This document shows positions 5,894 to 45,015 of a DNA stretch of 61,067 nucleotides, piece after piece. The stretch comes from Amphiscolops sp. MND2022 (lineage: Eukaryota), in the NCBI GenBank assembly GCA_964187785.1, contig CAXLNC010001431.1, positions 498,934 through 560,000 of the forward strand, given 5' to 3'. The translations under genes were made by a program, and so were the position numbers. The notes beneath the pieces were generated by a model, which saw only the letters and a list, made by a program, of their open reading frames with translations, ran no database searches and was not told where the DNA came from. The stretch's first letter is position 1. Each line of letters opens with the position of its first letter.

Positions 5894-5982
5894 TTTTTCA
5901 ACAATATGATTTTCTTCGCATAGTATTGAGAGGTTTCTGTGTAAGGCAATATCTAGAGTGTTCTTCCCGCAAGTTGGAATAG

Positions 5983-6522: not shown

Positions 6523-6531
6523 TGAACATAG

Positions 6532-7379
6532 TCACTTGGCGGTAGGAGTAATTTCAATTCTGATATCATCTTGGAAGAGTTCAAAATTTCTTATTTTGAG
6601 CGCACTCCTGGCGACTCCAGTTTCAATTGATTCTCGTCTCTTTTTCAAGCATGCATTTTCTTCGAACGCTTCCTCTCTCGTTAACGCTGGCAATATGTAG
6701 ATATTTTTGTTCATCAGTTCTGTTCGTTTTTCGATACTTTTGGCAAAAATTGTTCGTTTTTCCCATTCATTCGATACTTCAACCATTATTGTTCTGGGCT
6801 TTGATCTAGAATTGTCAAATTTTCCGAGTCTTTTCACATTAACTATTGGACTGGTGACTCCTAGTGTATTGAAAACATCTTTCAGTTTTTCATTTGTCAG
6901 TAGGATATTCTCTTTGGCTGGTTTATCAAAATCCTCAGGGATACCCTGAATTCGCAGACTTTTGTTGGTGTCGTGATCAACCTTTTTGGGGTTATGGTTT
7001 GGTATCTCAGCTTTTGGACCAGATGGTACTTTGCTCTCAATAACCTTTGTAAGAGATTTTTCAGACGAGTTCAATTTCATTTCCATCATCAGAGACATTT
7101 TTTCTCAATTTTTTCAAATTTCGCTTCAAGATCGGGAAATTGATACTTATCTTGAAGGTTTTGGGTGTTAATGGCCTCCAGGACTCGGTCACGCCTGTGG
7201 GTAGTCACACACTCGTCACAGAAAAGAACAACACTCACACCGAGCTCCTTGATTCCGTTAATAGCCACCGATGAAAGACCAGTACACACTTCAGTAAGGT
7301 GCATCTCCAGGCTGCATCCCACACAGTGAAAGCTGCCACCCTTGCCGATGCCCTTCTTGCAGGTTTTGCAATTGACCAT
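6532..7379 (-). pseudogene. LINE ORF1 (PHD finger, coiled coil, RRM-like part), split by a frameshift near 7090
   Basis: CKTC...FHCVGCSLEMHLTEVC...FCDEC is PHD-like. SLRIQGIPE...VKRLGKF...KPRTIMV...IYILPALTREE is typical of CR1-group ORF1. Confidence 0.8.
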
Positions 7380-25457: not shown

Positions 25458-25849
25458 AAAATAACGCGAATTCATATTTCGACATATTTCATTCAAGTCT
25501 ATAAGAAGGTTTCGTACTGCGTTTCTTCGAAAAGAAGTCGACCTTGAGCTTAAAAAATGCCCCCAAATAGAAACAGTCATTTGAAGTTCGCAAATAAACC
25601 TATAAGCCGCGGCTTGTACTCGAAAAAGTACAGTAATTTGATCGATTTCAACCGCTCAAACTTTGAACATGAATCAGTTAAAATTATGCAAAACTGATGT
25701 ATTTACTTTTTTGATAATGAATAACTAAATAAATCCAAACCATTGAAGTATAGATCATTGCATCTCCCCGGATGTGATTTCACAACTATCGAATGAGTGT
25801 TTTTTTGTCACTGAAAGTGTTTTATGAACTTCAGCCTATGATATGGAAT

Positions 25850-26131
25850 CTGATCTCTTTCACTATGTCCTCCCCTTTTTGTGTCTTCTCACTATTCGTT
25901 TTCATTTGCAAATCTCTCAGGCTATTCTGTCAATCAATTGATCTCTTCATATGTATCGACACTTTTGATTGTCTCCTATCAAAATCCACCACTCAGCCAA
26001 TCAGGAGCGTTGATACTTCGTACATGTATTTAAAAGTGTTTCACTTTGCCCTCTCCCTTTCCCATGTATTTAAGAGCGTTTCACTTTGTCCTCCGTTTTT
26101 TGCTATAGGGGGACATAGTGAAAGAGATCAG
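25850..26131. mobile_element. MITE with perfect 21-bp TIR
   Basis: CTGATCTCTTTCACTATGTCC / GGACATAGTGAAAGAGATCAG. Confidence 0.85.
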
Positions 26132-26535
26132 TAGTAAAAGTACGTGGCATTATAGGCGGGGGGGTTGAGTGAGTAACCAAATATGGTCATAACGCGGACT
26201 CCAAAATGACGTCATGGTTGCGACACAATGACGTAACCGAATGCAAAAATACCTAAAATAACGTCACCAATCATTACATTTCATTGGTTGACGAAAAAGA
26301 GCGACAAACAAAAGTGGATTGGTTTTGCCATTGGCGAAGCAAAAGCTTGAGTCTGGAAGAAGTTAGTTTTCTTGGTGACAAAGTAGTAGTGGGATCTTTT
26401 TCTTTGTAGTGGGATCTGTTGTTATCCAGGTTTGAACCTCAGGATGTCCTCAATCTTTTCTAGTATTTGTGCAAGGGCTACTTTTCGGCAAAAATATCTT
26501 TAAAAAAACTGATGGTTCGACGCAAAAAATGTATG

Positions 26536-26833
26536 TTTTTGCACATGACGAAGTCAATGTGCATTGCAGTCCAGCTAAGAAAGTTTTTTTTTCCACAATA
26601 GCCAACTTCATAATAACCGCCTTTTAGAGAAAAGCCAAAACCCCAGAGAGATTCGAACCTGCAGCCTCCCGATTGCGCGGCATAAGTGTTAACCACTGTG
26701 CCATAAGGACGTTATTGAATAAAGTTGAACTGTTGAATATATATACGCATGCGAATAAAATAATATATATACGCATATTAAAATAATCGTTGTCTTCGTC
26801 ATGTGTTGCGAAGCACCGCTTCGCCTCTGTGTT
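26536..26833 (+). repeat. About 300-bp cassette, copy 2
   Basis: Near-identical to 14188-14486. Confidence 0.85.
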
Positions 26834-28099
26834 GATATTTGTGTTTTCATGAAAGTTCACACGTGAATGATACTTGTTTGTAATCAAAGGACACGATATA
26901 TGGATACTGAAAATTTGAACAATGATCCTGAGTCTTGCAACAGACAGCGGTTATGATTCAATGGTTTCATTTGACGAAGATAATGCTGATGATGTTGGTC
27001 TGATGCATCTCAATATTGAGGTTGTAGAACTGTTGAACGCTTGTTCTCATGGCTGGATCAAGATCAACAAATTGACATTTTGCAAGACTGGATGGTTGAT
27101 GATGAGTAGTATGTATGATGATGTCGAGGGATCTGGAAAGAAAATTATTTTGATGAATTCCCGCAGAACATGAAAAGCTAATTTTGAAACCTCTTTTCAC
27201 GAATCTGACGGATTTTTTTTCTTTTTGGAGACGCTATATCAAACTGTTGAGCAAGCGTTTTTGCAAAGTGTTCAAGTCTTCTAATGTTAGCACGAGCTCT
27301 CTCGACGAGTCAAATAGATCAGGAAATAATTCAGTTAACGTACAATTTTTGCTTTGCATTTCCTATTTGAAAGTATAAAGCTTTTGAAACATTAGTGAAC
27401 TGAATGCTAACAGGAGGCCAAAGTCAGGTACCCTCACTTGTTTCTCTAAATCTGAGGTTGCCTCTTTTGAAACTTTGTCTTCGAGCAGTTCTACTTTATA
27501 CAGCAATTCAAGCTCCTTCATGTTTAAATGATCAGTGTTCTAAAGCAAAATTACAGCGAGAAAAAAACAAAGAGTACCTTTTAAACTTTGTTCAAGATAG
27601 CTACTTGTGGATGGCTTATTACAATCAGCTTTATCATTCTTAAAGTACCATGCGACATTGTTTTTATCATCCTCCATGAACAGTTTCTCCAAGAGGTTCC
27701 TTTATTTTTTCGACATGAACCTAAATTTTGCATCAAAACAGTGTTTCTCATGAATTTGGAGTTCTTCAAATTTTTTTGGTCCATGGGGGGATTTTTTCCC
27801 TTTCGGAAAACAATTATTCAAAGGGATCTTTCTTCCTCTTTCCAAGGTTTTAAAATTGAAAAAAAGGCTGAAACTAAGTTTTTTCGTGAGTCAAGACCGT
27901 GCAATCATGTTTAAGTTCGCACCAGAATATGACAATGAAACCCATTTCAGAATGTGTAACTTTTCTCCATTTTTTTCAATGGATTGTTGACGTTAGTTAT
28001 AACGTGAAACAAAGTAGTAATTGATTATATACAAAACTAGATTCAAATTCACAAAGTGAGTCTTGACGAATAGTACTGTTAATGAAAACTATAACTTAG

Positions 28100-29400
28100 C
28101 TATCAGTTGTTTTTTGAAGACGCCAATTGAAGAACATCGGAAAAGTTCGTTCCAAGAACGTCTCAGTGTAGTGAAATTGGTGTCATGTCGACGCCCCTGG
28201 TACGCATCTTGTGAACGTTCATAGACTTGCACTTTTTGAGCTGTTTCTTCTAAATTTCATCGACCCTTTTGTTCGACTTTGGGAGAAGTTGATTAGGTCT
28301 CGCCAGACCAATCATTAGTTTGACCCCTTTCGTTTTGCATTCGTTTTTCCGTAATGTCTTTAGGTGACAGTGTTGAAACACTATTGTTCCCTCAAACACA
28401 TAATTTCCCAATCAACTACCAATTTTGTGTCGGCAAAAAATTAAATTTTGTTGCTCGAAAGAAAAACTAACTTAGTGGCAATGTGAGCGAATGGTAGAGA
28501 ATGTCGGGGAAGATAAAGTCGAATTGACACCCTGGTCGAGAGAGGGCTTGGATCAACCAGAAGTCAAGTGTAGGTTTTCAGAATTGTTTGGAAAAGTATT
28601 CATGTCGACCGCCTCTTTCGGCGAGAATTTGAATAAGTTTATATTGAGATGATTCCTCAATGATCAAGAAAGATTTGAAGCACCAATAACAGTCTCGTGC
28701 TTTTTCTCCATAAAATCTGAAAACAGATGAAACGTTATTTCAGAGTCAGAGCGGAATAGTTTTGGTAATGGAACATGCGTGCAAGCACAGACAAAAACAA
28801 AAAACATGCAGATTTTTAGTTTGAAGATCATTCTTTATAAAAAAATACTAATATGATTTATTTACACGTTTTCTGGAGGGCCTGGAAGATACCCGCATCA
28901 AGGTTACCCTCCATCCAGGCCTCCATACACGCGAGCAGGATTCCGCGCTCGTGTTTCCCGATCGCCCGGAAGGCGAACACGTCGAGCACGGGTTCCACTC
29001 TTGGCCTGTCGATGTACGATTGGATTCCCTGCAGCGAAAAGTTTGAACTTTAACTTTTGAGATGAAATTTCAACAAAAAGCTCTAGAAAAAGATCGAACA
29101 ACCTACCTCGTCCCCGACCATCATGATCAAGGTGTCGCAGGTGTCCCTCGACACCTCGAGGAGACATCCCGACCTGCACTTTTGGTTGACGAAGCCCCAA
29201 GCGAAGTGGTCGATGGCATTTAGTTCATTCCATAGAAGCATTTTGAAGTTGCGTGCAAAGATTTTACTTGTTTTATGGCAGTTAGCAAACTGATTTTCTT
29301 TTAGTTTCGAGCAAGGAATGATTTTTTCGAGCTCGTCAGGCTCTACCACTTTTCCAAGCACCTCCGTCGGTTTCTTCCAGTTTCACTTTGTTCTGGGAAA
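28100..29400 (-). pseudogene. Best-preserved copy of an unknown multi-exon gene with an SGNH-like C-terminal domain
   Basis: Exon ending ...TLIMMVGDE, GT-AG intron, exon 28866-29028 (GIQSYID...GIFQALQKT), 149-nt intron 28717-28865, then in-frame YFMEKKHETVIGASNLS. The unique flank continues IQALSRPG...GNNS. Stops and frameshifts present. Confidence 0.7.
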
Positions 29401-32400
29401 CATCAAAGATTTTAACCCAGACACGATTTCCATATCTAATCAATTGGAAACTCAGATAAATAACCATTTTTATGGCTTATAAGGTCTCGATCAAAGATTC
29501 GGCGTTCTTTTGAACCTAATTTCAAAGTGTTACAGGATTCACCTTTATTCCTTTGCATTTCGAAACCCAGCAAATTTGAGTTTCCATGTGATGAATCGAA
29601 GAAAAGACCGACAGTGGTAATTAATACTAGAATTGTATAGAAGAGTATTCATGTCGACCGCCACTTTCGGCGAGACTTTGGATAGGTTTATGATGAGAGA
29701 ATCCTCAATGATCAATAAAGATTTGAAGCACCAATAACAATCGCGTGTTTTCTCCATAAAATTTGAAAACAAATGAAACGTTATTTCAGAGTCAGAGCAG
29801 AATAGTTTTTGTAATGGAACAAGCGTGCAAGCACAGACAAGAACAAAAAACATGCAGATTTTTAGTTTAAAGATCATTCTTTATAAAAAAATACTAATAT
29901 GATTTATTTACACGTTTTTTGGAGGGCCTGGAAGATACCCGCATCAAGGTTACCCTCCCTCCAGGCCTCCATACACGCGAGCAGGATTCCGCGCTCGTGT
30001 TTCCCGATCGCCCGGAAGGCGAACACGTCGAGCACGGGTTCCACTCTTGGCCTGTTGATGTACGATTGGATTCCCTGCAGCGAAAAGTTTGAACTTTAAC
30101 TTTTGCGATGAAATTTCAACAAAAAGCTCTAGAAAAAGATCGAACAACCTACCTCGTCCCCGACCATCATGATCAAGGTGTCGCAGGTGTCCCTCGACAC
30201 CTCGAGGAGACATCCCGAACTGGACCTCTGGTTGACAAAGCCCCAAGCGAAGCGGTCGTTGGCATTTAGTTTATTCCATAGAACCATTTTGAAGTTGCGA
30301 GCAAAGATTTTACTTGTTTTATGGCAGTTAGCAAACTGATTTTTTTTAGTTTCGAGCAAGGAATGATTTTTTCGAGCTCGTCAGGCTCTACCACTTTTCC
30401 AAGCACCTCCGTCGGTTTCTTTCAGTTTCACTTTGTTCTGGGAAACATCAAAGATTTTAACCCAGACACGATTTCCATATCTAATCAATTGGAAACTCAG
30501 ATAAATAACCATTTTTATGGCTTATAAGGTCTCGATCAAAGATTCGGCGTTCTTTTGAACCTACTTTCAAAGTGTTACAGGATTCACCTTTATTTCTTTG
30601 CATTTCGAAACCCAGCAAATATGAGTTTCCATGTGATGAATCGAAGAAAAGACCGACAGTGGTAATTGATACTAGAATTGTTTAGAAGAGTATTCATGTC
30701 GACCGCCACTTTCGGCGAGACTTTGGATAGGTTTATGATGAGAGAATCCTCAATGATCAATAAAGATTTGAAGCACCAATAACAATCGCGTGTTTTCTCC
30801 ATAAAATCTGAAAACAAATGAAACTTTATTTCAGAGTCAGAGCAGAATAGTTTTTGTAATGGAACAAGCGTGCAAGCACAGACAAAAACAAAAAACATGC
30901 AGATTTTTAGTTTAAAGATCGTTCTTTATAAAAAAAATACTAATATGATTTATTTACACGTTTTTTGGAGGGCCTGGAAGATACCCGCATCAAGGTTACC
31001 CTCCATCCAGGCCTCCATACACGCGAGCAGGATTCCGCGCTCGTGTTTCCCGATCGCCCGGAAGGCGAACACGTCGAGCACGGGTTCCACTCTTGGCCTG
31101 TCGATGTACGATTGGATTCCCTGCAGCGAAAAGTTTGAACTTTAACTTTTGAGATGAAATTTCAACAAAAAGCTCTAGAAAAAGATCGAACAACCTACCT
31201 CGTCCCCGACCATCATGATCAAGGTGTCGCAGGTGTCCCTCGACACCTCGAGGAGACATCCCGACCTGCACCTTTGGTTGACGAAGCCCCAAGCGAAGTG
31301 GTCGATGGCATTTAGTTCATTCCATAGAAGCATTTTGAAGTTGCGTGCAAAGATTTTACTTGTTTTATGGCAGTTAGCAAACTGATTTTCTTTTAGTTTC
31401 GAGCAAGGAATGATTTTTTCGAGCTCGTCAGGCTCTACCACTTTTCCAAGCACCTCCGTCGGTTTCTTCCAGTTTCACTTTGTTCTGGGAAACATCAAAG
31501 ATTTTAACCCAGACACGATTTCCATATCTAATCAATTGGAAACTCAGATAAATAACCATTTTTATGGCTTATAAGGTCTCGATCAAAGATTCGGCGTTCT
31601 TTTGAACCTAATTTCAAAGTGTTACAGGATTCACCTTTATTCCTTTGCATTTCGAAACCCAGCAAATTTGAGTTTCCATGTGATGAATCGAAGAAAAGAC
31701 CGACAGTGGTAATTGATACTAGAATTGTTTAGAAGAGTATTCATGTCGACCGCCACTTTCGGCGAGACTTTGGATAGGTTTATGATGAGAGAATCCTCAA
31801 TGATCAATAAAGATTTGAAGCACCAATAACAATCGCGTGTTTTCTCCATAAAATCTGAAAACAAATGAAACGTTATTTCAGAGTCAGAGCAGAATAGTTT
31901 TTGTAATGGAACAAGCGTGCAAGCACAGACAAAAACAAAAAACATGCAGATTTTTAGTTTAAAGATCATTCTTTATAAAAAATACTAATATGATTTATTT
32001 ACACGTTTTTTGGAGGGCCTGGAAGATACCCGCATCAAGGTTACCCTCCCTCCAGGCCTCCATACACGCGAGCAGGATTCCGCGCTCGTGTTTCCCGATC
32101 GCCCGGAAGCGAACACGTCGAGCACGGGTTCCACTCTTGGCCTGTCGATGTACGATTGGATTCCCTGCAGCGAAAAGTTTGAACTTTAACTTTTGAGATG
32201 AAATTTCAACAAAAAGCTCTAGAAAAAGATCGAACAACCTACCTCGTCCCCGACCATCATGATCAAGGTGTCGCAGGTGTCCCTCGACACCTCGAGGAGA
32301 CATCCCGAACTGGACCTCTGGTTGACAAAGCCCCAAGCGAAGTGGTCGTTGGCATTTAGTTTATTCCATAGAACCATTTTGAAGTTGCGAGCAAAGATTT

Positions 32401-35400
32401 TACTTGTTTTATGGCAGTTAGCAAACTGATTTTTTTTAAGTTTCGATCAAGGAATGATTTTTTCGAGCTCGTCAGGCTCTACCACTTTTCCAACCACCTC
32501 CGTCGGTTTCTTCCAGTTTCACTTTGTTCTGGGAAACATCAAAGATTTTAACCCAGACACGATTTCCATATCTAATCAATTGGAAACTCAGATAAATAAC
32601 CATTTTTATGGCTTATAAGGTCTCGATCAAAGATTCGGTGTTCTTTTGAACCTAATTTCAAAGTGTTACAGGATTCACCTTTATTCCTTTGCATTTCGAA
32701 ACCCAGCAAATTTGAGTTTCCATGTGATGAATCGAAGAAAAGACCGACAGTGGTAATTGATACTAGAATTGTTTAGAAGAGTATTCATGTCGACCGCCAC
32801 TTTCGGCGAGACTTTGGATAGGTTTATGATGAGAGAATCCTCAATGATCAATAAAGATTTGAAGCACCAATAACAATCGCGTGTTTTCTCCATAAAATCT
32901 GAAAACAAATGAAACGTTATTTCAGAGTCAGAGCAGAATAGTTTTTGTAATGGAACAAGCGTGCAAGCACAGACAAAAACAAAAAACATGCAGATTTTTA
33001 GTTTAAAGATCATTCTTTATAAAAAAATACTAATATGATTTATTTACACGTTTTTTGGAGGGCCTGGAAGATACCCGCATCAAGGTTACCCTCCCTCCAG
33101 GCCTCCATACACGCGAGCAGGATTCCGCGCTCGTGTTTCCCGATCGCCCGGAAGGCGAACACGTCGAGCACGGGTTCCACTCTTGGCCTGTTGATGTACG
33201 ATTGGATTCCCTGCAGCGAAAAGTTTGAACTTTAACTTTTGAGATGAAATTTCAACAAAAAGCTCTAGAAAAAGATCGAACAACCTACCTCGTCCCCGAC
33301 CATCATGATCAAGGTGTCGCAGGTGTCCCTCGACACCTCGAGGAGACATCCCGAACTGGACCTCTGGTTGACAAAGCCCCAAGCGAAGTGGTCGTTGGCA
33401 TTTAGTTTATTCCATAGAACCATTTTGAAGTTGCGAGCAAAGATTTTACTTGTTTTATGGCAGTTAGCAAACTGATTTTTTTTAAGTTTCGATCAAGGCA
33501 TGATTTTTTCGAGCTCGTCAGGCTGTACCACTTTTCCAAGCACCTCCGTCGGTTTCTTCCAGTTTCACTTTGTTCTGGGAAACATCAAAGATTTTAACCC
33601 AGACACGATTTCCATATCTAATCAATTGGAAACTCAGATAAATAACCATTTTTATGGCTTATAAGGTCTCGATCAAAGATTCGGCGTTCTTTTGAATCTA
33701 ATTTCAAAGTGTTACAGGATTCACCTTTATTCCTTTGCATTTCGAAACCCAGCAAATTTGAGTTTCCATGTGATGAATCGAAGAAAAGACCGACAGTGGT
33801 AATTGATACTAGAATTGTTTAGAAGAGTATTCATGTCGACCGCCACTTTCGGCGAGACTTTGGATAGGTTTATGATGAGAGAATCCTCAATGATCAATAA
33901 AGATTTGAAGCACCAATAACAATCGCGTGTTTTCTCCATAAAATCTGAAAACAAATGAAACGTTATTTCAGAGTCAGAGCAGAATAGTTTTTGTAATGGA
34001 ACAAGCGTGCAAGCACAGACAAAAACAAAAAACATGCAGATTTTTAGTTTAAAGATCATTCTTTATAAAAAAATACTAATATGATTTATTTACACGTTTT
34101 TTGGAGGGCCTGGAAGATACCCGCATCAAGGTTACCCTCCCTCCAGGCCTCCATACTCGCGAGCAGGATTCCGCGCTCGTGTTTCCCGATCGCCCGGAAG
34201 GCGAACACGTCGAGCACGGGTTCCACTCTTGGCCTGTCGATGTACGATTGGATTCCCTGCAGCGAAAAGTTTGAACTTTAACTTTTGAGATGAAATTTCA
34301 ACAAAAAGCTCTAGAAAAAGATCGAACAACCTACCTCGTCCCCGACCATCATGATCAAGGTGTCGCAGGTGTCCCTCGACACCTCGAGGAGACATCCCGA
34401 ACTGGACCTCTGGTTGACAAAGCCCCAAGCGAAGTGGTCGTTGGCATTTAGTTTATTCCATAGAACCATTTTGAAGTTGCGAGCAAAGGTTTTACTTTTG
34501 TGGCAGTAAGCAAACTGATTTTTTTAAGTTTTGAGCAAGGAATGATTTTTCGAGCTCGTCAGCCTCTACCACTTTTCCAAGCACCTCCGTCGTTTTTTTT
34601 GATCTGGGAAACATCAACGATTTTAACCCAGACACGATTTCCATATCTAATTAATTGGAAACTCAGATAAATAACCTTTTTTATGGCTTATAAGGTCTCG
34701 CTCAAAGACTCGGCGTTCTTTCAAACCTATTTTCAAAGTGTTACAGGATCCACCTTTATTCCTTTGAATTTCGGAACCCAGCAAATATGAGTTTCCATGT
34801 GATGAATCAAAGAAAAGACCGACAGTAGTAATTGATAGTAGAATTGTTTAGAAGAGTATTCATGTCGACCGCCACTTTCGGCGAGACTTTGGATAGGTTT
34901 ATGATGAGATGACTCCTCAATCTTTCTAGAAAGATTTGAAGCACCAATATCAATCGCGTGCTTTTTCTCCATAAAATCTGAAAACAGATGAAACGTTATT
35001 TCAGAGTCAGAGCAGAATAGTTTTGGTAATGGAACAAGCGTGCAAGCACAGACAAAAACAAAAAACATGCAGATTTTTAGTTTAAAGATCATTCTTTATA
35101 AAAAATTACTAATATGATTTATTCACACGTTTTCTGGAGGGCCTGGAAGATACCCGCATCAAAGGTACCCTTCATCCAGGCCTCCATACACGCGAGCAGG
35201 AGCCGGCGCTCGTGTTTCCCGATCACTCAGAAGGCGAACACATCGAGCACGGGCTCCACTCTGGTCCCGTCGATGTACGATTGGATTCCCTGCAGCGAAA
35301 AGTTTGAACTTAACTTTTGAGATGAAATTTCAACGACTAAAAGTTCTAGAAAACAAAGATCGAACAACCTACCTCGTCCCCGACCATCATGATCAAGGTG

Positions 35401-36682
35401 TCGCAGGTGTCTCCGACACCTCGAGGAGACATCCCGACCTGGACCTCTAGTTGACGAAGCCCCAAGCGAAGTGGTCGATGGCATTTAGTTCATTCCATAG
35501 AAGCATTTTGAAGTTGCGTGCAAAGATTTTACTTGTTTTATGGCAGTAAGCAAACTGATTTTTTTTAGTTGCGAGCAAGGAATGATTTTTCGAGCTCGTC
35601 AGGCTCTGCCACTTTTCCAAGAACCTCCGTCGGTTTCTTCCAGTTTCACTTTGATCTGGGAAACATCAAAGATTTTAACCCAGACACGATTTCCATATCT
35701 AATCAATTGGAAACTCAGATAAATAACCCTTTTTATGGCTTATAAGGTCTCGATCAAAGACTCGGCGTTCTTTTGAACCTATTTTCAAAGTGTTACAGGA
35801 TCCACCTTTATTCCTTTGAATTTCGGAACCCAGCAAATATGAGTTTCCATGTGATGAATCAAAGAAAAGACCGACAGTGGTAATTGATACTAGAATTGTT
35901 TAGAAGATTATTCATGTCGACCGCCACTTTCGGCGAGACTTTGGATAGGTTTATGATGAGATTAATCCTCGATGATCAATAAAGATTTGAAGCACCAATA
36001 ACAATCGCGTGTTTTCTCCATAAAATCTGAAAACAAATGAAACGTTATTTCAGAGTCAGAGCAGAATAGTTTTGGTAATGGAACAAGCGTGCAATCACAG
36101 TCAAAAACAAAAAACATGCAGATTTTCAGTTTAAAGATCATTCTTTATATAAAAAAATACTAATATGATTTATTTACACGTTTTTTGGAGGGCCTGGAAG
36201 ATACCCGCATCAAGGTTACCCTCCCTCCAGGCCTCCATACACGCGAGCAGGAGCCCGCGCTCGTGTTTCCCGATCGCCCAGAAGGCGAACACATCGAGCA
36301 CGGGGTCCACTCTTGTCCTGTCGATGTACGATTGGATTCTCTGCAGCGAAAAGTTTGAACTTTAACTTTTGAGATGAAATTTCAACAAAAAGCTCTAGAA
36401 AAAGATCGAACAACCTACCTCGTCCCCGACCATCATGATCAAGGTGTCGCAGGTGTCCCTCGACACCTCAACGAGACATCCCGACCTGGACCTCTGGTTG
36501 ACAAAGCCCCAAGCGAAGTGGTCCTTGGCATTTAGTTCATTCCATAGAACCATTTTGAAGTTGCGAGCAAAGATTTTACTTTTGTGACAGTAAGCAAACT
36601 GATTTTTTTTAGTTGCGAGCAAGGGATGATTTTCGAGCTCGTCAGGCTCTACCACTTTTCCAAGCACCTCCGTCGGTTTCTT
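28580..36682. repeat. Tandem array of about eight 1033-1051 bp units derived from a spliced gene
   Basis: An anchor motif recurs at 28853, 29899, 30945, 31990, 33035, 34081, 35114, 36165. Confidence 0.97.
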
Positions 36683-37050
36683 GGCCTGAGTACTGGCCCC
36701 CTCAATGTAAGCCTGGATCCCCTACAGCAGAAAAATAGTGAGCGGTCGTTTTTGAGGCAAAACTTCAACGGTAAAAAGCTCTGAAAAACAGATAATTAAA
36801 AACATACCTCATCTCCACAAATCGTTCTCAGAGTGTCGTATGTCTCACTGAAGACGTCGAGAACACGCGAGGCCTTTCACCTCTTGTTCCCGACGCTCCA
36901 GCCGAAACGGTCGATTTGGTCGAGCTCTTACCAGCTTAGCATGATTAAGGCGAATGAGTTTGATTTCAGAAATAAACTGTTTTGCACTTTTTGAGTAAGG
37001 AATGAATTTTTTGTGCTCGCCAGGCTCAACAATTTTTTCAAGCCTCCATG
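36683..37050 (-). pseudogene. Diverged paralogue fragment of the array gene (exon, intron 36722-36807, exon start)
   Basis: KIVEPGE...DRFGWS...YDTLRTICGDE|GIQAYIE aligns with KVVEPDE...DHFAWG...CDTLIMMVGDE|GIQSYID, with the same phase-0 intron. Confidence 0.75.
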
Positions 37051-38149
37051 CCACCCATAGAAAAGCGCATATTCACTAAACGAAAATGAAGCATGTAGAA
37101 AAACAAGAATGCAAAATTATACAACAAAGACTACGAAAGAAAACAAAAGGAATAGGGGAATAAAAGATTGGAAAATTGGACAAATTCTCAGGAAACGAGC
37201 TGCACAAGATGTTAGATCGTTCCTCGCGACTGTTGAAAACAAAATTAATTCTACAATGGGTCATGAACCCGACAACAATGATGAACGAGGGTGATATTTA
37301 TTCCGAAAAAAAATGGAATTTTTCTCATCCCTTCTAAGAGGACCAGCCGCTGAATGGTACGCAGATAATATAACATGAACACGATTGGCAACATATCAGG
37401 ACTCATTTTCGAATTCGTTTTTCCGACAATAGAGATAAATACAGATACAGAATAACCGCGGAAAACAGTGTCAGAGGAAATGAAGAAATAATATGTTGGT
37501 TAGTTTCGAAATTAGAATCTTTTATCAACAATCAACAATGTCGCTTAACGATTCAGTCACTTCTACAGTCAACAAGTCTATGAGTGATAGTTACTTTTGG
37601 ATTGGAAGGGAGAGATTCTGACGTCTACTCTTCGAGTTGCGAGATTAATGAGTAACTTAACGAGATTCGAATGGCAACCATCGAATTTCTTCCATCGAGT
37701 GAAACGAGCTGTCGATAGAGGATGGCCAGATTAAGAAAATGCTGACAACGCAGCCAGAGCCGAATTGAACGCCCAAAGGAGGCACAAACACATCAATATG
37801 CCGTCAGAGGATTAACGCCAAACGAACTCGAGAACAAGGCTCACCAATTCCTAATTGAACACCCTAACGCAACTTGGGAACAATTTCAAGAACATGTAAC
37901 AAATAAAGACCTTGTTTTCAAAATCAACTCTCAGTTAACACCTCCCAGAATTAAAAAACGTTGATGAATGAACTACGGAAGACAAAAACAATGAAGAATA
38001 TGCTTGGTCTGTAGTTTATGGAGATGTTCAATTTATCCTAGTTTGAATTGTTTTCTTTTCAATCACAATTTGTGATGTTGATTTTTTTTCACACTACTGG
38101 TAAAGTTTTAGCAAGGTTTCAGAAAGTTTTAGTGTCCTGGCGGTTCGCC

Positions 38150-39300
38150 TTAAACGGCCGAACTGCCTGGAATAGGTACCGCTGTGGTTGTTGATGTTTT
38201 AATCAACAAGCCTCCATATAGGGGTGACTGCTCAATGCTCCTCAGTAGAATCTCTTCCTATTCAATCTTTGGATAGTTATAGTCATTACAATTTAATCCT
38301 GCATTTCTCAAACTGGCATCTCTCAAACAAAATAACGTTATTACGAAACTTAAATTAAAACACACAACAAAAACCCACAAAACACATTTCATTATATGCA
38401 ATTATTTATATACAATTATTTACAAAATATCCTCGCTCTCTGTGGGGATGATGGTCGCCCCATTGGGAGGCGGTTTGGGGTGCCCAGGACACAGGCACAC
38501 AATGTACCCCCTAACTCGGCCAGGTCTTGGAGGGCCTGAAAAAAAATGGCCACGGTCCAGCTGCCACGCTATACATTCATGGCCTTGCGGATTGTCATTT
38601 TCCTTCCTTGGACAATAGCCTTGAGCTTGAATACCCAGACATTCTTTGCCCCGGATTGTAACTTCTCTTTCCACTAAAACAAATCGAAAGTTGTTCACAA
38701 GACCAAACAAACATTTCTGCCCTAGGTTTCTCTCTCGCGTTTAGAAATCACAAGTTACAGAACCTTGTACAATCAATTCCAATGACGCCTTTCCCGTTTT
38801 TTTTCTTGATTTTCCTTATGAGAAATATGCAAAAATCCCTTCTCTATACGGTTTTGGTGTCAGAGCATACTAATCAACAACTTACGTGGTCTCCTAACGC
38901 CAGTCTTACTGCCCTTCGCAGTGGTTCCGGGCGACGCAACACTTCACTCTCCGGCGTAACTCCCACCATCAAATGCATCTCCAAATCTGTTACTAGGGAC
39001 CGCAAGTCAGCAAACAGATCTGGCGCTAGATAAGCGCCAGGAGCAGTCGAAAACGGCAAACGGTTCGACTTTTGTCAAATTTCAACAAATTGTCAGCGAA
39101 GAATTACTAAGTCTGAAATAACAAATACTTTCAACCTCAAATTTCATTTTCACCACCCCCTTATGTCCATTAAAAATTTACCTTGTTCTCTGCTACTGAA
39201 AACTTTCTGCTTTTCTCCGCTTTCTTTCCCCATATGCATTCAATTTCTCCTACCGCTTTTTCGGTGGTCGAGCGTGTCATATACACGATAACAAAGTTCA
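38150..39300 (-). pseudogene. Third paralogue of the array gene (repeated about 3 kb and, partially, 6 kb further right)
   Basis: Exon 38886-39112 ending RLALGDH|GTAAGT; next exon from 38673 VFKLKAIV...QLDRG..FQALQD; then an SGNH-like exon with IEQSPLY...A(V)SIPG. Confidence 0.6.
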
Positions 39301-40159
39301 AGTCTATGAAAAAATCGAAAAGAATATCAAAAACGAACTTACTGGTGAATATGAGGAGCTTAGACTAACATCCAAGAGCGCATCTGACACAAACAAAATT
39401 CAATAGCCACTCGAGGAATACATGACGACCACAACCAAAGCGTACTCAACACAGAGCAACTTCAAACCACCACTTCAAAAACAGACTCGGCACCCATAGA
39501 AAAGCGCATATTCAATAAACGAAAATGATAAGATAAAAGACCATCGATATAGGTCAAACAAAACAAAAGAACTCAAAGCAACTTCAAGCCACCATTTCAA
39601 AAACACACATGGCACCTATAGAAAAGCGCTCAATAAACGAAAATGATTAGATAAAAGATCACCGATATAGGTCAAACAAAACAAAAGAAAAACTCAATAC
39701 CCAAAGAAGTGACAAAGAGTTCACTTTTCAAAAGCATGTAGAAAACAAAAGGATGCAAAATTATACAACAAAGACTACAAAAGAAAACAAAAGGAATAGG
39801 AGAATGAAAGATAAAACTAACAAACAATGCCCTGTTAAAAGAGAATCTTGTGAAAAGAATAGAATTCTATAGGATAATTTTTGCCTTTTGAAACAAGCTT
39901 TTGCAATTGTAAGACATTGTTTAAATATTACAGAAGAAATCAAGTAGCATTTTCGAACATTGTACTTTATTTTGGTCAAGTTTCAGTCAAAACTTAGTTG
40001 ATAATGAAGCCCGTCTTGAACGACATCCCGATCGTAATCATCAAAAACTTTAAATTCAACTGTTTTTGGAATGTCATGCCTGAGTTAGAAGAAACCACCA
40101 TGATAATGGAATAATTCAACTGGAGCGACCAGTGAGGCACACACTTGAAAAATAGAAGA

Positions 40160-40945
40160 ATGGCGGATAATACTGTTTCATTTCCTAAATTCTCAGGAAA
40201 CGAACTGCACAAGATGTTAGATCGTTCCTCACGACTGTTGAAACAAAATTAATTTTCCAATGGGTCATGAACGCGACAATGATGAACGAGGGAGATATTT
40301 ATTCCGAAAAAAGACACTTCTCATCCGTTCTAAGAGGACCAGCCGCTGAATGGTACGCAGATAATATAACAGATGAACACGATTGGCAACATATCAGGAC
40401 TCATTTTCGAACTCGTTTTTCCGACTATAGAGATAAATACAGATACAGAATAACCGCAGAAAACAGTGTCAGAGGAAATGAAGAAATCATATGTTGGTTA
40501 GTTTCGAAATTAGAATCTTACTTTTATCAACAAATCAGCAATGTCGTTTAACGATTCAGTCACTTCTATAATCAAGTTTATGAGTGATGGTTACTTTTGG
40601 ATTGGAAGGAAGAGATTCTGACATCTACTCTTCGAGTTTCCAGAATAATGAGTAACTTAACGAGATTCGAATTGCAACCATCGAATTTCTTCCATCGAGT
40701 GAATCGAGCTGTCGATAAAGGATGGCCAGATGAAGAAAATGCTGACAACGCAGCCAGAGCCGAATTGAACGCCCAAAGGAGGCACAAACACATCAATATG
40801 CCGTCAGAGGATTAACTCCAAACGAACTCAAGAACAAGGATCACCAATACCTAATTGAACACCCTAACGCAACTTGGGAACAATTTCAAGAACATGTAAC
40901 AAATAAAGACCTTGTTTACAAAATCAACTCTCAGTTAGCACCGGA
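40160..40945 (+). pseudogene. Gypsy gag remnant (also at about 37185-37955 and 43159-43945)
   Basis: MADNTVSFPKFSG...LRGPAAEWY...W...F..RFSD...FHRVNRAVDKGWP...HPNATWEQF, interrupted by an insertion of about 200 bp. Confidence 0.8.
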
Positions 40946-43900
40946 CTCCTCCCAGAATTAAAAAACGTTGATGAATGAACTACGGAAGACAAAAACAATG
41001 AAGAATATGCTTGGTCTGTAGTTTATGGAGATGTTCAATTTATCCTAGTTTGAATTGTTTTCTTTTCAATCACAATTTGTGATGTTGATTTTTTTCACAC
41101 TACTGGTAAAGTTTTAGCAAGGTTTCAGAAAGTTTTAGTGGCCTGGCGGTTCGCCTTGAACGGCCGAACTGCCTGGAATAGATACCGCTGTGGTTGTTGA
41201 TGTTTTAATCAACAAGCCTCCATATAGGGGTGACTGCTCAATGCTTCTCAGTAGAATCTGTTCCTATTCAATCTTTGGATAGTTATAGTCATTACAATTT
41301 AATCCTGCATTTCTCAAACTGGCATCCAAAATAACGTTATTACGAAACTTAAATTAAAACACACAACAAAAACCCACAAAACACATTTCATTACATACAA
41401 TTATTTATATACAATTATTTACAAAATATCCTCGCTCTCTGTTGGGATGATGGTCGCCCCATTGGGAGGCGGTTTGGGGTGCCCGGGACACAGGCACACA
41501 ATGTACCCCCTAACTCGGCCAGGTCTTGGAGGGCCTGAAAAAAATGGCCACGGTCCAGCTGCCACGCTATACATTCATGGCCTTGCGGAATTGTCATTTT
41601 CCTTCCTTGGACAATAGCCTTGTGCTTGAATACCCAGACATTCTTTGCCCCGGATTGTAACTTCTCTTTCCACTAAAACAAATCGAAAGTTATTCACAAG
41701 ACCAAACAAACATTTCTGCCCTAGGTTTCTCTCTCGCGTTTAGAAATCACAAGTTACAGAACCTTGTACAATCAATTCCAATGACGCCTTTCCCGTTTTT
41801 TTCTTGATTTTCGTTATGAGAAATATGCAAAAATCCCTTCTCTATACGGTTTCGGTGTCAGAGCATACTAATCAACAACTTACGTGGTCTCCTAACGCCA
41901 GTCTTACTGCCCTTCGCAGTGGTTCCGGGCGACGCAACACTTCACTCTCCGGCGTAACTCCCACCATCAAATGCATCTCCAAATCTGTTACTAGGGACCG
42001 CAAGTCAGCAAACAGATCTGGCGCTAGATAAGCGCCAGGAGCAGTCGAAAACGGCAAACGGTTCGACTTTTGTCAAATTTCAACAAATTGTCAGCAAAGA
42101 ATTACTAAGTCTGAAATAACAAATACTTTTCAACCTCAAATTTCATTTTCACCACCTCCTTATGTCCATTAAAAATTTACCTTGTTCTCTGCTACTGAAA
42201 ACTTTCTGCTTTTCTCCGCTTTCTTTCCCCATATGCATTCAATTTCTCCTACTGCTTTTTCGGTGGTCGAGCGTGTCATATACACGATAACAAAGTTCAA
42301 GTCTATGAAAAAATCGAAAAGAATATCAAAAACGAACTTACTGGTGAATATGAGGAGCTTAGACTAACATCCAAGAGCGCATCTGACACAAACAAAATTC
42401 AATAGCCACTCGAGGAATACATGACGACCACAACCAAAGCGTACTCAACACAGAGCAACTTCAAACCACCACTTCGAAAACAGACTTGGCACCCATAGAA
42501 AAGCGCATATTCAATAAACGAAAATGTTAAGATAAAAGACCACCGATATAGGTCAAACAAAACAAAAGAACTCAAAGCAACTTCAAGCCACCATTTCAAA
42601 AACACACATGGCACCTATAGAAAAGCGCTCAATAAACGAAAATGATTAGATAAAAGATCACCGATATAGGTCAAACAAAACAAAAGAAAAACTCAATACC
42701 CAAAGAAGTGACAAAGAGTTCACTTTTCAAAAGCATGTAGAAAACAAAAGGATGCAAAATTATACAACAAAGACTACAAAAGAAAACAAAAGGAATAGGA
42801 GAATGAAAGATAAAACTAACAAACAATGCCCTGTTAAAAGAGAATCTTGTGAAAAGAATAGAATTCTATAGGATAATTTTTGCCTTTTGAAACAAGCTTT
42901 TGCAATTGTAAGACATTGTTTAAATATTACAGAAGAAATCAAGTAGCATTTTCGAACATTGTAATTTATTTTGGTCAAGTTTCAGTCAAAACTTAGTCGA
43001 TAATGAAGCCCGTCTTGAACGACATCCCGATCGTAATCATCAAAAACTTTAAATTCAACTGTTTTTGGAATGTCATGCCTGAGTTAGAAGAGACCACCAT
43101 GATAATGGAATAATTCAACTGGAGCGACCAGTGAGGCACACACTTGAAAAATAGAAGAATGGCGGATAATACTGTTTCATTTCCTAAATTCTCAGGAAAC
43201 GAACTGCACAAGATGTTAGATCGTTCCTCACGACTGTTGAAACAAAATTAATTTTCCAATGGGTCATGAACGCGACAATGATGAACGAGGGAGATATTTA
43301 TTCCGAAAAAAGACACTTCTCATCCGTTCTAAGAGGACCAGCCGCTGAATGGTACGCAGATAATATAACAGATGAACACGATTGGCAACATATCAGGACT
43401 CATTTTCGAACTCGTTTTTCCGACTATAGAGATAAATACAGATACAGAGTAACCGCAGAAAACAGTGTCAGAGGAAATGAAGAAATCATATGTTGGTTAG
43501 TTTCGAAATTAGAATCTTACTTTTATCAACAAATCAGCAATGTCGTTTAACGATTCAGTCACTTCTATAATCAAGTTTATGAGTGATGGGGACTTTTGGA
43601 TTGGAAGGGAGAGATTCTGACATCTACTCTTCGAGTTTCCAGAATAATGAGTAACTTAACGAGATTCGAATTGCAACCATCGAATTTCTTCCATCGAGTG
43701 AATCGAGCTGTCGATAAAGGATGGCCAGATGAAGAAAATGCTGACAACGCAGCCAGAGCCGAATTGAACGCTCAACAAGGCACAAATACATTAAATTTGC
43801 CGTCAGAGGATTAACTCCAAACGAACTCAAGAACAAGGCTCACCAATACCTAATTGAACACCCTAACGCAACTTGGGAACAATTTCAAGAACATGTAACA

Positions 43901-45015
43901 AATAAAGACCTTGTTTTCAAAATCAACTCTCAGTTAGCACCGGACTCCTCCCAGAATTAAAAAACGTTGATGAATGAACTACGGAAGACAAAAACAATGA
44001 AGAATATGCTTGGTCTGTAGTTTATGGAGATGTTCAATTTATCCTAGTTTGAATTGTTTTCTTTTCAATCACAATTTGTGATGTTGATTTTTTTCACACT
44101 ACTGGTAAAGTTTTAGCAAGGTTTCAGAAAGTTTTAGTGGCCTGGCGGTTCGCCTTAAACGGCCGAACTGCCTGGAATAGATACCGCTGTGGTTGTTGAT
44201 GTTTTAATCAACAAGCCTCCATATAGGGGTGACTGCTCAATGCTTCTCAGTAGAATCTGTTCCTATGCAATCTTTGGATAGTTATAGTCATTACAATTTA
44301 ATCCTGCATTTCTCAAACTGGCATCTCTCAAACAAAATAACGTTATTACGAAACTTAAATTAAAACACACAACAAAAACCCACAAAACACATTTCATTAC
44401 ATACAATTATTTATATACAATTATTTACAAAATATCCTCGCTCTCTGTTGGGATGATGGTCGCCCCATTGGGAGGCGGTTTGGGGTGCCCAGGACACAGG
44501 CACACAATGTACCCCCTAACTCGGCCAGGTCTTGGAGGGCCTGAAAAAAATGGCCACGGTCCAGCTGCCACGCTATACATTCATGGCCTTGCGGAATTGT
44601 CATTTTCCTTCCTTGGACAATAGCCTTGTGCTTGAATACCCAGACATTCTTTGCCCCGGATTGTAACTTCTCTTTCCACTGAAACAAATCGAAAGTTATT
44701 CACAAGACCAAACAAACATTTCTGCCCTAGGTTTTTCTCTCGCGTTTAGAAATCACAAGTTACAGAACCTTGTACAATCAATTCCAATGACGCCTTTCCC
44801 GTTTTTTTTCTTGATTTTCGTTATGAGAAATATGCAAAAATCCCTTCTCTATACGGTTTTGGTGTCAGAGCATACTAATCAACAACTTACGTGGTCTCCT
44901 AACGCCAGTCTTACTGCCCTTCGCAGTGGTTCCGGGCGACGCAACACTTCACTCTCCGGCGTAACTCCCACCATCAAATGCATCTCCAAATCTGTTACTA
45001 GGGACCGCAAGTCAG

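What the first reader, a model, noticed from the sequence alone, without database searches (positions are those of the whole stretch)
28100..45015. Hidden spliced gene family with an SGNH-like domain underlies both tandem arrays
Seen: on the minus strand three diverged paralogues share a phase-0 intron after GD(E/H): CDTLIMMVGDE|GIQSYID, YDTLRTICGDE|GIQAYIE and RRAVRLALGDH|WKEKLQ. The first and third also share VF-x-(F/L)-(R/K)-AI...LD-x-G..FQALQ, an upstream intron of about 70 nt, and a downstream exon (VIGASNL..IEESS.Y...ALSRPG...GNNS versus IEQSPLY...AVSIPG) resembling SGNH blocks I-III. Differences between the first two favour third codon positions (GGA ATC CAA TCG TAC ATC versus GGG ATC CAG GCT TAC ATT). 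All copies carry stops or frameshifts. The N-terminal domain matches nothing I recognise. Inference: an uncharacterised, once-selected family of which intact members may exist elsewhere.
Basis: partly seen in the sequence, partly recalled or inferred. Interest (0 to 1): 0.7.

Follow-up and report, generated by a model that had tools for sequence, protein, structure and literature searches.

The report
Maverick accessory genes blown into arrays
The "hidden gene family" is real but is two small intron-containing accessory genes of a virus-like Maverick/Polinton element, one esterase-like and one swapped between elements as a highly variable cassette. The window holds only a dead, internally deleted copy with that corner repeated eight times, and the neighbouring 3-kb array comes from an unrelated retrovirus-like element.

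Summary
The quoted strings and both tandem arrays are there: about 1046 bp x 8, and about 3 kb x 2.7.

- **What array 1 is.** Its unit is a segment near the left end of a 17.6-kb Maverick/Polinton. That element has 65-bp inverted ends, a 6-bp target duplication, an rve integrase and an A32-type ATPase. One of its exons has over 100 copies in the genome.
- **Two genes, not one.** Gene A is 113 aa with a phase-0 intron. Gene B is 188 aa with a phase-1 intron.
- **Both are selected.** dN/dS is about 0.26 for each. Of 21 sampled dispersed copies, 9 have A intact and 13 have B intact.
- **Gene A is a shuffled cassette.** Its synonymous divergence is about 1.1, against 0.06 in gene B next door. Its distances do not follow those of the backbone, so it is exchanged by recombination.
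- **Gene B is only a candidate SGNH esterase.** It has candidate Ser, Gly, Asn and Asp-x-x-His residues at SGNH-like spacing, and protein language-model look-alikes are GDSL lipases. No HMM or solved-structure sequence match supports this, and there is no usable fold.
- **The "third paralogue" fails.** It is a different two-exon gene inside a 17.6-kb LTR retroelement (profile comparison E 0.25).
- **No expression evidence.** No RNA data exist.

Earlier notes of this scan report SGNH-like genes in other transposon classes and other Maverick cargo in this genome, but not this gene pair.

The parts
26130..26533 (-). Right end of the Maverick remnant, including the terminal inverted repeat (element positions 17171-17592)
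   Evidence: blastn against the complete C3 copy: 80% identity. Window 26130-26251 also matches the left inverted end.
26895..27703 (-). Right-hand internal part of the Maverick (element positions 16280-17125), joined directly to position 2779. This marks a 13.5-kb internal deletion.
   Evidence: blastn, 82% identity.
28106..28388 (-). Gene B exon 2 remnant (C-terminal half of the SGNH-like protein, holding the D-x-F-H block position), broken
   Evidence: tblastn: 67% aa identity, with in-frame stops and a frameshift.
28476..28711 (-). Gene B exon 1 remnant (starts MEKKH, has G-A-S-N), broken
   Evidence: tblastn: 68-87% aa identity, with a frameshift and a stop.
28858..29241 (-). Gene A copy in unit 1: exon 1 at 29107-29241, 78-nt GT..AG intron at 29029-29106, exon 2 from 29028 to an early stop
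   Evidence: Both exons are open and the splice sites are intact. The tail is frameshifted relative to the family.
29640..36523 (-). Tandem array 1: seven further units of about 1046 bp (element positions about 658-1733). Each holds gene A plus the first about 41 codons of gene B.
   Evidence: Repeat spacing is 1033-1051 bp at 93-100% identity. Mapping to the element. Per-unit state: (units 4 and 7 are broken).
36686..37051 (-). Fragment of a second, diverged gene A allele. Exon 1 has two stops, then the intron, then the first 12 codons of exon 2. It is fused to the array.
   Evidence: tblastn: 71% aa identity to another allele. blastn: 67% identity to element positions 931-1300. Sequence.
37049..45015 (-). 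Tandem array 2: about 3.0-kb units x 2.7. Each unit is a composite of two separated pieces of a 17.6-kb LTR retroelement.
   Evidence: One piece carries gene X and matches the parent at 70%. The other is the gag 5' part and matches at 81-86%.
41884..42120 (-). Gene X exon 1 (ends ..LALGDH then GT). Further copies lie at 38886-39122 and 44891-45016.
   Evidence: tblastn: 80-90% aa identity to the parent element.
41422..41672 (-). Gene X exon 2 (starts WKEKLQ), frameshifted here. Further copies lie at 38423-38673 and 44428-44678.
   Evidence: tblastn matches in two frames. The family has over 100 copies with an open 84-aa frame.
43266..43814 (+). gag fragment of the LTR retroelement, on the opposite strand to gene X. 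A further copy lies at 40267-40815.
   Evidence: ORFs. The segment matches the parent's gag region. The parent's gag hits Retrotrans_gag weakly, E 2.2e-4 and 21.8 bits against a 24.1-bit cut-off.

Best explanation
Window 26130-37051 (minus strand) is a dead Maverick/Polinton, a virus-like DNA transposon. It has lost 13.5 kb of its interior. A 1.05-kb piece near its left end has been amplified into eight tandem units, most likely by unequal exchange or replication slippage after insertion (inferred).

The amplified piece carries the first of two small accessory genes that intact elements of this family encode just inside the left inverted end.
- Gene A is 113 aa in two exons with a phase-0 intron of 71-90 nt.
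- Gene B lies 107-122 nt downstream. It is 188 aa in two exons with a phase-1 intron of 92-145 nt.

Both genes are kept by purifying selection in the active lineage. Gene A with its short flanks is a cassette. Its alleles are very old, yet they sit in nearly identical backbones in combinations that do not follow backbone kinship. It is therefore exchanged by recombination between elements (shown). This is the pattern expected of a protein that meets a variable partner such as host defence or competing elements (inferred).

Gene B is probably a small SGNH/GDSL-type esterase or lipase. Lipases are common accessory genes of this virus group (inferred; about 0.6).

The adjoining 3-kb array is an independent amplification of two joined fragments of an LTR retroelement. 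One fragment carries an unrelated two-exon gene X on the strand opposite gag. Its likeness to gene A is chance or too remote to detect.
For: Element identity:
- The unit maps to positions 5540-6590 of the C6 copy, with over 90 dispersed matches.
- Two copies align over about 17 kb.
- 65-bp inverted ends and a 6-bp duplication, TACAAT.
- rve E 5.7e-12 and Pox_A32 E 3.1e-10.
- Family-B polymerase motifs K-x3-N-S-x-Y-G and D-T-D-S, and an H..C-G-L-Y-C protease-like ORF.
- All 22 sampled copies share the same left boundary.

Genes:
- Exon frames stay open across copies.
- GT..AG is kept in 18 of 21 (A) and 17 of 21 (B) copies. Intron lengths vary by non-multiples of three.
- dN/dS is 0.26 for both genes.
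- The last exon is open in most of 141 matches.
- The same A-then-B order, and the same gene A intron position, occur in another species' contig.

Cassette:
- Identity is 0.63-0.78 inside the cassette against 0.93-0.97 beside it.
- dS is 1.1 against 0.056.
- Spearman rho for cassette against backbone distances is 0.08 and 0.18. For left against right backbone it is 0.89.

Gene B as SGNH-like:
- The candidate Ser, Gly and Asn motifs recur in the other species' fragment. H is invariant in the D-x-F-H block, and Asp is Glu in one of the two other-species fragments.
- GDSL lipase is the only named family near both halves in the ESM Atlas (0.92 and 0.85).
- Lipases are common in this virus group (bioRxiv 10.64898/2026.10.13.758929).

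Array 2:
-.
- A against X comparisons give E 0.22-0.37.
Against: - No RNA evidence exists. The four public runs holding the sequence behave as DNA and show no GT..AG joints. Splicing and the two-gene model therefore rest on conservation only.
- Gene B has no Pfam, PHROG or PDB sequence match.
- PF13472 searched over the whole genome hits other ORFs but not gene B.
- AlphaFold on a single exon gave pLDDT 56 and is unusable.
- The polymerase and protease are recognised only by short motifs. The capsid genes were not identified.
- The cassette analysis uses 21 of more than 100 copies, and these are related to one another.
- Region-specific hypermutation, rather than old alleles, is not excluded as the source of the divergence.
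Confidence: 0.8

Rival explanations
1. One reading: one spliced host gene family, with an unknown N-terminal domain fused to an SGNH domain. Its decayed paralogues underlie both tandem arrays.
For: The three strings share a G-(D/E)-(E/H) then GT junction and a loose V-F..A-I..A-W..L-D-x-G..F-x-x-L-Q pattern. Gene A and gene B lie on the same strand only 107-122 nt apart.
Against: - All sampled copies lie at a fixed place inside a Maverick.
- Gene A's tail and stop are conserved, and gene B has its own ATG.
- Possible donors after ..LQALQK differ in phase between alleles.
- Gene X is not significantly similar to gene A or to gene B. It belongs to a different element.
Confidence: 0.05
2. Gene A and gene X are very remote homologues. 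They would form one superfamily of small helical accessory proteins carried by unrelated mobile elements, both prone to tandem amplification.
For: - Both have two exons with a phase-0 intron after a similar G-(D/E)-(E/H) motif.
- The second exon shows a loosely similar motif order.
- Both occur as tandem arrays: gene A here, and gene X here and at G000:C5:54207500-54217499.
Against: Profile-profile comparison gives E 0.25 and probability 0.25%. The similarity is best with the window's own allele and fades in the parent copies. Lengths and C-terminal parts differ.
Confidence: 0.12
3. The eight-unit array is a working amplification. The host or the element would gain from many expressed copies of a tail-less gene A.
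For: 6 of 8 units keep both exons open with intact splice sites. Units are 93-100% alike.
Against: - Every unit lacks the conserved C-terminal tail because of a shared frameshift.
- dN/dS between units is 0.52, on few changes.
- The surrounding element is deleted and gene B is broken.
- No RNA data exist.
- High unit identity is equally expected from a young or homogenised satellite.
Confidence: 0.08
4. Gene B is not an SGNH hydrolase. It would be an unrelated small alpha/beta or helical protein whose short motifs mimic SGNH blocks by chance.
For: No HMM or PDB sequence match at permissive thresholds. The block III candidate departs from G-x-N-D. The AlphaFold model of the second exon was all-helical, though at pLDDT 56. 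The Atlas scores (0.85-0.92, 111-155 shared features) are in the range where chance hits occur.
Against: - The candidate Ser, Gly and Asn motifs and His recur in the other species' fragments at about 40% identity (Asp is Glu in one). Their spacing matches that of small SGNH enzymes (TAP numbering from memory).
- GDSL is the only named family that appears for each half, searched separately.
Confidence: 0.35

Closest known systems
Maverick/Polinton (adintovirus-type) elements and their accessory genes
   Same: About 17.6 kb, terminal inverted repeats, 6-bp target duplication, rve integrase, A32-type ATPase and polymerase-B motifs. Variable accessory genes sit beside the core. Published examples include a phospholipase A2 and gasdermin-like and TRAF-like genes (PMC8502044). 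Lipases are reported as common in the wider virus group.
   Different: Genes A and B match no named accessory gene. The big protein search with gene B's second exon found 4 unnamed fragments, and a word search with gene A's second exon found 3. Both genes carry introns. Gene A is a recombining, highly diverged cassette in a near-uniform backbone; I found no report of this for Mavericks in the papers searched.
GDSL/SGNH esterases carried by other mobile elements (rotifer Terminons and LTR elements; LINE first-ORF esterases)
   Same: A small esterase-like accessory gene placed at one end of a mobile element, proposed to help cross membranes (PMC6431247). Earlier notes of this scan report such genes in LINE, BEL/Pao, Gypsy and DNA transposons of this genome.
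   Different: Those are recognisable SGNH proteins. This genome has many PF13472-positive intronless ORFs, but gene B is not detected by that model. Gene B has an intron and sits in a DNA virus-like element. Kinship with those families was not tested because no further genome sequence could be fetched.
E. coli thioesterase I/TAP, the small archetype of SGNH hydrolases (from memory: Ser10, Gly44, Asn73, Asp154, His157 in 183 aa)
   Same: Gene B is 188 aa, with candidates Ser12, Gly34/35, Asn79, Asp163 and His166 in the same order and at similar spacing.
   Different: G-A-S-N replaces G-D-S-L. Block III is L-Y-N-S rather than G-x-N-D. There is no detectable sequence homology, and neither fold nor activity has been shown.
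Transposon-derived tandem repeats (satellites born from internal pieces of mobile elements)
   Same: Head-to-tail units of 1-3 kb cut from the inside of an element, highly alike, lying in a decayed copy.
   Different: Two arrays from two unrelated elements abut at about 37050. Each unit happens to hold a small two-exon accessory gene.
Diversity hotspots and accessory-gene cassettes of phages
   Same: A short, sharply bounded region of very high divergence inside otherwise similar genomes, exchanged by recombination. In phages such regions hold defence or counter-defence genes (bioRxiv 10.1101/2024.10.15.618418, abstract as listed).
   Different: Here the alleles are homologous versions of one gene, not unrelated genes, and the host is an animal. 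The function is unknown.

Membership tests
Maverick/Polinton | Terminal inverted repeats | tested here: met
   66-bp inverted match at 91% between the two ends of the C3 copy. The ends are shown.
Maverick/Polinton | 6-bp target-site duplication | tested here: met
   TACAAT flanks both ends of the C3 copy.
Maverick/Polinton | Retrovirus-like (rve) integrase | tested here: met
   PF00665, E 5.7e-12, 46.2 bits, above the cut-off.
Maverick/Polinton | A32/FtsK-type packaging ATPase | tested here: met
   PF04665 Pox_A32, E 3.1e-10, above the cut-off.
Maverick/Polinton | Protein-primed family-B DNA polymerase | tested here: inconclusive
   Motifs K-x3-N-S-x-Y-G and D-T-D-S lie 100 residues apart in the 472-aa ORF. 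No Pfam or PDB sequence match beyond zinc fingers.
Maverick/Polinton | Adenain-like cysteine protease and double jelly-roll capsid genes | tested here: inconclusive
   The 141-aa ORF has G-H-W and C-G-L-Y-C motifs. Only a weak below-cut-off Pfam hit was found. The capsid candidates gave no family match.
SGNH/GDSL hydrolase (gene B) | Match to a family profile (PF13472 / PF00657) | tested here: not met
   No Pfam hit at E up to 1 for either exon. A whole-genome PF13472 search lists 39 other places and none in the element. No PDB match.
SGNH/GDSL hydrolase (gene B) | Block I serine just after the first strand, near the N-terminus | tested here: inconclusive
   G-A-S-N at residues 10-13 is invariant in 8 aligned copies and present as A-A-S-N in the other species' fragment. 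This is motif level only.
SGNH/GDSL hydrolase (gene B) | Block II glycine and block III asparagine (oxyanion hole) | tested here: inconclusive
   E-S-G-G and L-Y-N-S are conserved in both species. Block III is not the usual G-x-N-D.
SGNH/GDSL hydrolase (gene B) | Block V Asp-x-x-His near the C-terminus | tested here: inconclusive
   D-x-F-H-Y, with F, H and Y invariant in 14 sequences. One other-species fragment has E in place of D. This is motif level only.
SGNH/GDSL hydrolase (gene B) | Three-layer alpha/beta/alpha fold | tested here: inconclusive
Only single exons could be folded. Exon 2 gave pLDDT 56.5 and is unusable. ESM Atlas features point to GDSL lipases for both halves (0.92 and 0.85). 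This is a lead only.
One family across both arrays (gene A = gene X) | Significant sequence or profile similarity | tested here: not met
   hhalign E 0.29, 0.22 and 0.25. As a positive control, gene A against its relative in the other species gives E 1.1e-6.
LTR retroelement (parent of array 2) | Long terminal direct repeats with gag and RT/RNase H between them | tested here: met
   Direct repeats of about 0.8 kb lie about 17.6 kb apart in the C9 copy. RVT_1 (E 7e-12) and RT_RNaseH_2 (E 3e-25) pass their cut-offs. Retrotrans_gag is weak (E 2.2e-4, 21.8 bits against a 24.1-bit cut-off). A viral fusion glycoprotein scores E 3e-24.

The most novel reading that the evidence does not exclude
Gene A is a recombining specificity cassette of an animal Maverick lineage. 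It would be a small protein kept in many ancient allelic forms and shuffled between otherwise near-identical elements. The reason would be that it meets a fast-changing partner, such as host defence, cell-death or signalling machinery, or rival elements. That would make it an animal-virus counterpart of phage diversity hotspots.
Probability: 0.3. Interest if true: 0.65.

Novelty: new member of a known kind. Interest (0 to 1): 0.4.

Why it matters
Mavericks/Polintons are virus-like elements whose accessory genes are mostly unexplored in invertebrates.

This family adds two intron-bearing, selected genes that no database names. One may be a lipase or esterase of the kind that many mobile elements and small DNA viruses carry. 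The other shows old alleles swapped between young backbones. That pattern usually marks genes caught in conflict with a host or with competitors.

The gene A cassette gives a concrete, testable entry point for asking what these elements fight over in an animal genome.

The tandem arrays themselves are ordinary decay products of mobile elements. They should not be annotated as a host gene cluster.

Tried and rejected
- **Family scans.** Pfam on every exon and neighbouring ORF gave nothing for genes A, B or X. PHROGs gave nothing useful.
- **Solved structures.** PDB sequence searches with exon profiles gave only chance hits. The polymerase ORFs hit only zinc fingers.
- **Protein searches.** The word-based searches (3 of 3 used) returned only unnamed ORF fragments. 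The exhaustive representative search with the gene B exon 2 profile returned 4 unnamed fragments.
- **RNA evidence.** One run search found four runs of one study, with no RNA on record. Laying their contigs gave even cover across introns and no GT..AG joints.
- **Folding.** AlphaFold on gene B exon 2 gave pLDDT 56.5 and on gene X exon 2 gave 51.7. Both are too poor for a fold search, so none was run.
- **Comparison with the genome's recognisable SGNH ORFs.** I planned a profile comparison of gene B with them.
- **Helitron link.** No Rep/helicase gene was met in any copy of the element or among the larger window ORFs that I scanned.
- **Inverted ends.** The C6 copy has none detectable at the shared boundaries because a 200-N gap covers its right end. 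The C3 copy settled the point.
- The spliced (joined) proteins were neither built, searched nor folded. The database protein P0029 was used only to locate its contig and for reading by eye. It is a read-through of a broken copy, with W at TGA codons.

Full report
**Setting.** The window is G000:C1444:498934-560000 of a 1.07-Gb eukaryote assembly. Base composition is about 37-42% G+C throughout.

**The observation.** Two tandem arrays are present.
- The first has eight copies with 1033-1051-bp spacing between about 28.1 and 36.6 kb.
- The second has units of about 3.0 kb, 2.7 of them, from 37049 to 45015.

**What the 1046-bp unit is.**
- It is a dispersed repeat with over 90 matches on all large contigs.
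- Comparing four, then two extended, genomic copies showed that the unit is positions 5540-6590 of an element about 17 kb long.
- In the C3 copy the element is 17.6 kb. It is bounded by about 65-bp inverted repeats and a 6-bp duplication, TACAAT.
- It encodes an rve integrase (E 5.7e-12) and a Pox_A32-type ATPase (E 3.1e-10).
- A 472-aa ORF carries polymerase-B motifs B and C, and another ORF is protease-like with an H..C-G-L-Y-C pattern.
- This is a Maverick/Polinton. The polymerase, protease and capsid are recognised only weakly or not at all.
- All 22 copies sampled share the same left boundary.

**The window copy.** On the minus strand it reads as follows.
- A fragment of a second gene A allele lies at 36686-37051.
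- Eight units follow, covering element positions about 658-1733.
- The element then continues to position 2779 and jumps to 16280, a 13.5-kb deletion.
- It runs on to the right inverted end at 26130.
- It is therefore a dead, deleted element with one corner amplified.

**Gene structure.** I use the C6 copy (locus L004) only as a coordinate frame.
- *Gene A:* ATG at 5945 and exon to 6079. Intron 6080-6150. Second exon 6151-6354, then a stop. That gives 45 + 68 codons.
- *Gene B:* ATG at 6469 and exon to 6724. Intron 6725-6862 in phase 1. Second exon 6863-7170, then a stop. That gives 188 codons.

**Evidence that the introns are real.**
- GT..AG is kept in 18 of 21 copies for A and 17 of 21 for B.
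- Intron lengths range over 71-90 nt and 92-145 nt, in steps that are not multiples of three, while the flanking exons stay open.
- The gene A intron is at the same place in a contig of another species, where the donor has decayed.

**Evidence for two genes rather than one.**
- The 15 codons after ..LQALQK keep a serine, an aromatic residue, a cysteine and K-N, and stop at the same position across alleles with saturated synonymous divergence. A fragment from another source shows the same.
- Gene B starts with its own conserved ATG.
- GT dinucleotides after ..LQALQK fall in different phases in different alleles.

**Intactness.** Among 21 sampled dispersed copies, gene A is intact in 9, gene B in 13, and both in 9. 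The last exon of gene B alone gave 141 genomic matches, most with an open 102-105-residue frame.

**Selection.** I counted substitutions exon by exon without joining exons.
- Gene A has median dS 1.1, dN 0.27 and dN/dS 0.26.
- Gene B has dS 0.056, dN 0.014 and dN/dS 0.26.

**The cassette.**
- Conservation along the element drops sharply between about 5850 and 6450. This span is gene A with its short flanks.
- Pairwise identity there is 0.63-0.78, including the intron, against 0.93-0.97 on both sides.
- Distances in the left and right backbone agree with each other (Spearman 0.89). Cassette distances do not follow either (0.08 and 0.18).
- For example, copies 2-3% apart in backbone differ by 27-38% in the cassette. 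Copies sharing a cassette at 2% differ by 5-9% in backbone.
- Old alleles are therefore reassorted among young backbones.
- Because neutral sites (intron, synonymous) are as diverged as the protein, this is deep allelic age or local hypermutation plus recombination. It is not simply fast protein evolution.

**Relatives.**
- Word-based searches found only unnamed ORF fragments from ENA assemblies.
- The exhaustive search with the profile of gene B's second exon found four proteins in 1.84 billion.
- Two of these lie on contigs of one ENA assembly (ERZ26859043) whose DNA barely matches this genome. It is another species.
- There the same order is seen: gene A, then gene B, then a stretch matching the next Maverick gene.
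- Gene A's second exon matches its counterpart there at hhalign E 1.1e-6.

**Is gene B an SGNH hydrolase?**
- *For:* the protein is 188 residues, with G-A-S-N at 10-13, E-S-G-G at 32-35, L-Y-N-S at 77-80 and D-x-F-H at 163-166.
  - The Ser, Gly and Asn motifs and His recur in the other species' fragments at about 40% identity. Asp is Glu in one of them.
  - The order and spacing resemble the small SGNH enzyme TAP (numbers from memory).
  - In the ESM Atlas the only named family near each half, searched separately, is GDSL lipase (0.92 and 0.85). By the tool's own figures these are leads, not proof.
- *Against:* there is no Pfam, PHROG or PDB sequence match.
  - A PF13472 search of the whole genome finds 39 other places, many of them multi-copy 306-residue open frames, but not this gene.
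  - Block III is atypical.
  - The only fold I could attempt, the second exon alone, came out at pLDDT 56.5.
- That joined step is left out.
- I rate the SGNH fold at about 0.6 and do not file gene B as a member.

**The third 'paralogue' and array 2.**
- The 3-kb unit joins two pieces that lie about 7 kb apart in a 17.6-kb element present on C9 and C6 at 93.5% identity.
- That element has direct terminal repeats, a weak gag match, RT/RNase H, a Monjiviricetes-type fusion glycoprotein and a TRAF-type MATH-domain ORF, all on one strand.
- One piece of the unit is the 5' part of gag.
- The other piece holds a two-exon gene X on the opposite strand. Exon 1 ends ..LALG(E/D)H then GT. Exon 2 is an 84-codon frame that is open in most of its 100-plus genomic copies.
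- In the window its second exon is frameshifted.
- Gene X is real, but it is not detectably related to gene A (E 0.29, 0.22, 0.25). Its downstream string is not related to gene B (E 0.37).
- The shared '..G-D-E/H then GT' junction and the F-Q-A-L-Q pentamer are best explained as chance. The pentamer is absent from the parent copies.
- A very remote relationship cannot be excluded.

**State of the window's gene A copies.**
- Six of eight units have both exons open with an intact 78-nt GT..AG intron.
- A frameshift shared by all units replaces the conserved tail with a stop three codons after ..LQALQK.
- Units 4 and 7 carry further damage.
- The array therefore grew from an already damaged copy.

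**Expression.** The single run search found four runs from one study, none recorded as RNA. Their contigs cover introns and exons alike and show no GT..AG joints. Expression and splicing are untested.

**Literature.**
- GDSL esterases are known cargo of rotifer Terminons and LTR elements, with a proposed role in crossing membranes (PMC6431247).
- Adintovirus-type Mavericks carry membrane-active accessory genes such as a phospholipase A2, but no esterase is listed (PMC8502044).
- A 2026 preprint lists lipases as common in polintons, virophages and their kin, and describes module-level mosaicism.
- I found no report of an allelic cassette like gene A.

**Earlier notes of this scan (unchecked leads).** They report other Maverick cargo in this genome, SGNH-like first genes in several transposon classes, and one esterase gene blown into a tandem array. 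Sequence look-ups for this gene pair were blank.

**Verdict.**
- The family is not a host family, is not one gene, and does not span both arrays.
- It is the accessory gene pair of a Maverick lineage.
- The arrays are ordinary amplified debris of two mobile elements.
- The point worth following is the recombining gene A cassette.

The alignment tool prints majority lines of its own accord, and these were ignored.

Noticed in passing
L051 (G000:C5:54207500-54217499): A second tandem array of gene X: at least eight units of 1.16-1.27 kb. Each holds both exons. Units are 60-99% alike, so the array is older than the one in the window.
   Followed up: partly
L031+L032 (G000:C9:50117000-50136999) and L033+L034 (G000:C6:64064000-64083999): A 17.6-kb LTR retroelement encoding a Monjiviricetes-type viral fusion glycoprotein (E 3e-24) and a TRAF/meprin MATH-domain ORF (E 6e-20). 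It also carries the opposite-strand two-exon gene X between pol and env.
   Followed up: partly
Gene B exon 1 in loci L013-L016 and L019 (corresponds to L004:6585-6600): An in-frame serine-codon microsatellite inside gene B grows from 5 to about 56 codons in some copies without breaking the frame. In other copies it is a frameshifted proline run.
   Followed up: no
L029:10001-10852 (ENA ERZ26859043): The other species' gene B copy has TGA at places where the family has tryptophan (TGG). The database protein P0029 reads these as W, so it was called with another genetic code. The locus does not translate to it under the standard code.
   Followed up: partly
L004:1291-4873 and L006 (joined C6 copy, positions 25453-29000): The C6 Maverick copy lies between 3.6-kb inverted repeats that are 93% alike. 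These are not part of the element as defined by the other copies. A 200-N gap hides its right end.
   Followed up: no
G000, many places (for example C10:2078140-2078547, C2:32533194-32533601): Multi-copy intronless open frames of 306 residues that pass the Lipase_GDSL_2 cut-off with identical scores. They are probably the esterase first genes of retrotransposons noted earlier in this scan.
   Followed up: no
window 414-2999 (+) and 3692-5893 (-): An intronless 861-residue ORF with BTB, B-box, BACK and Kelch domains, next to a 734-residue reverse-transcriptase ORF.
   Followed up: no
window 39448-39689 and 42447-42688: A 118-bp repeat present twice in tandem inside each 3-kb unit.
   Followed up: no
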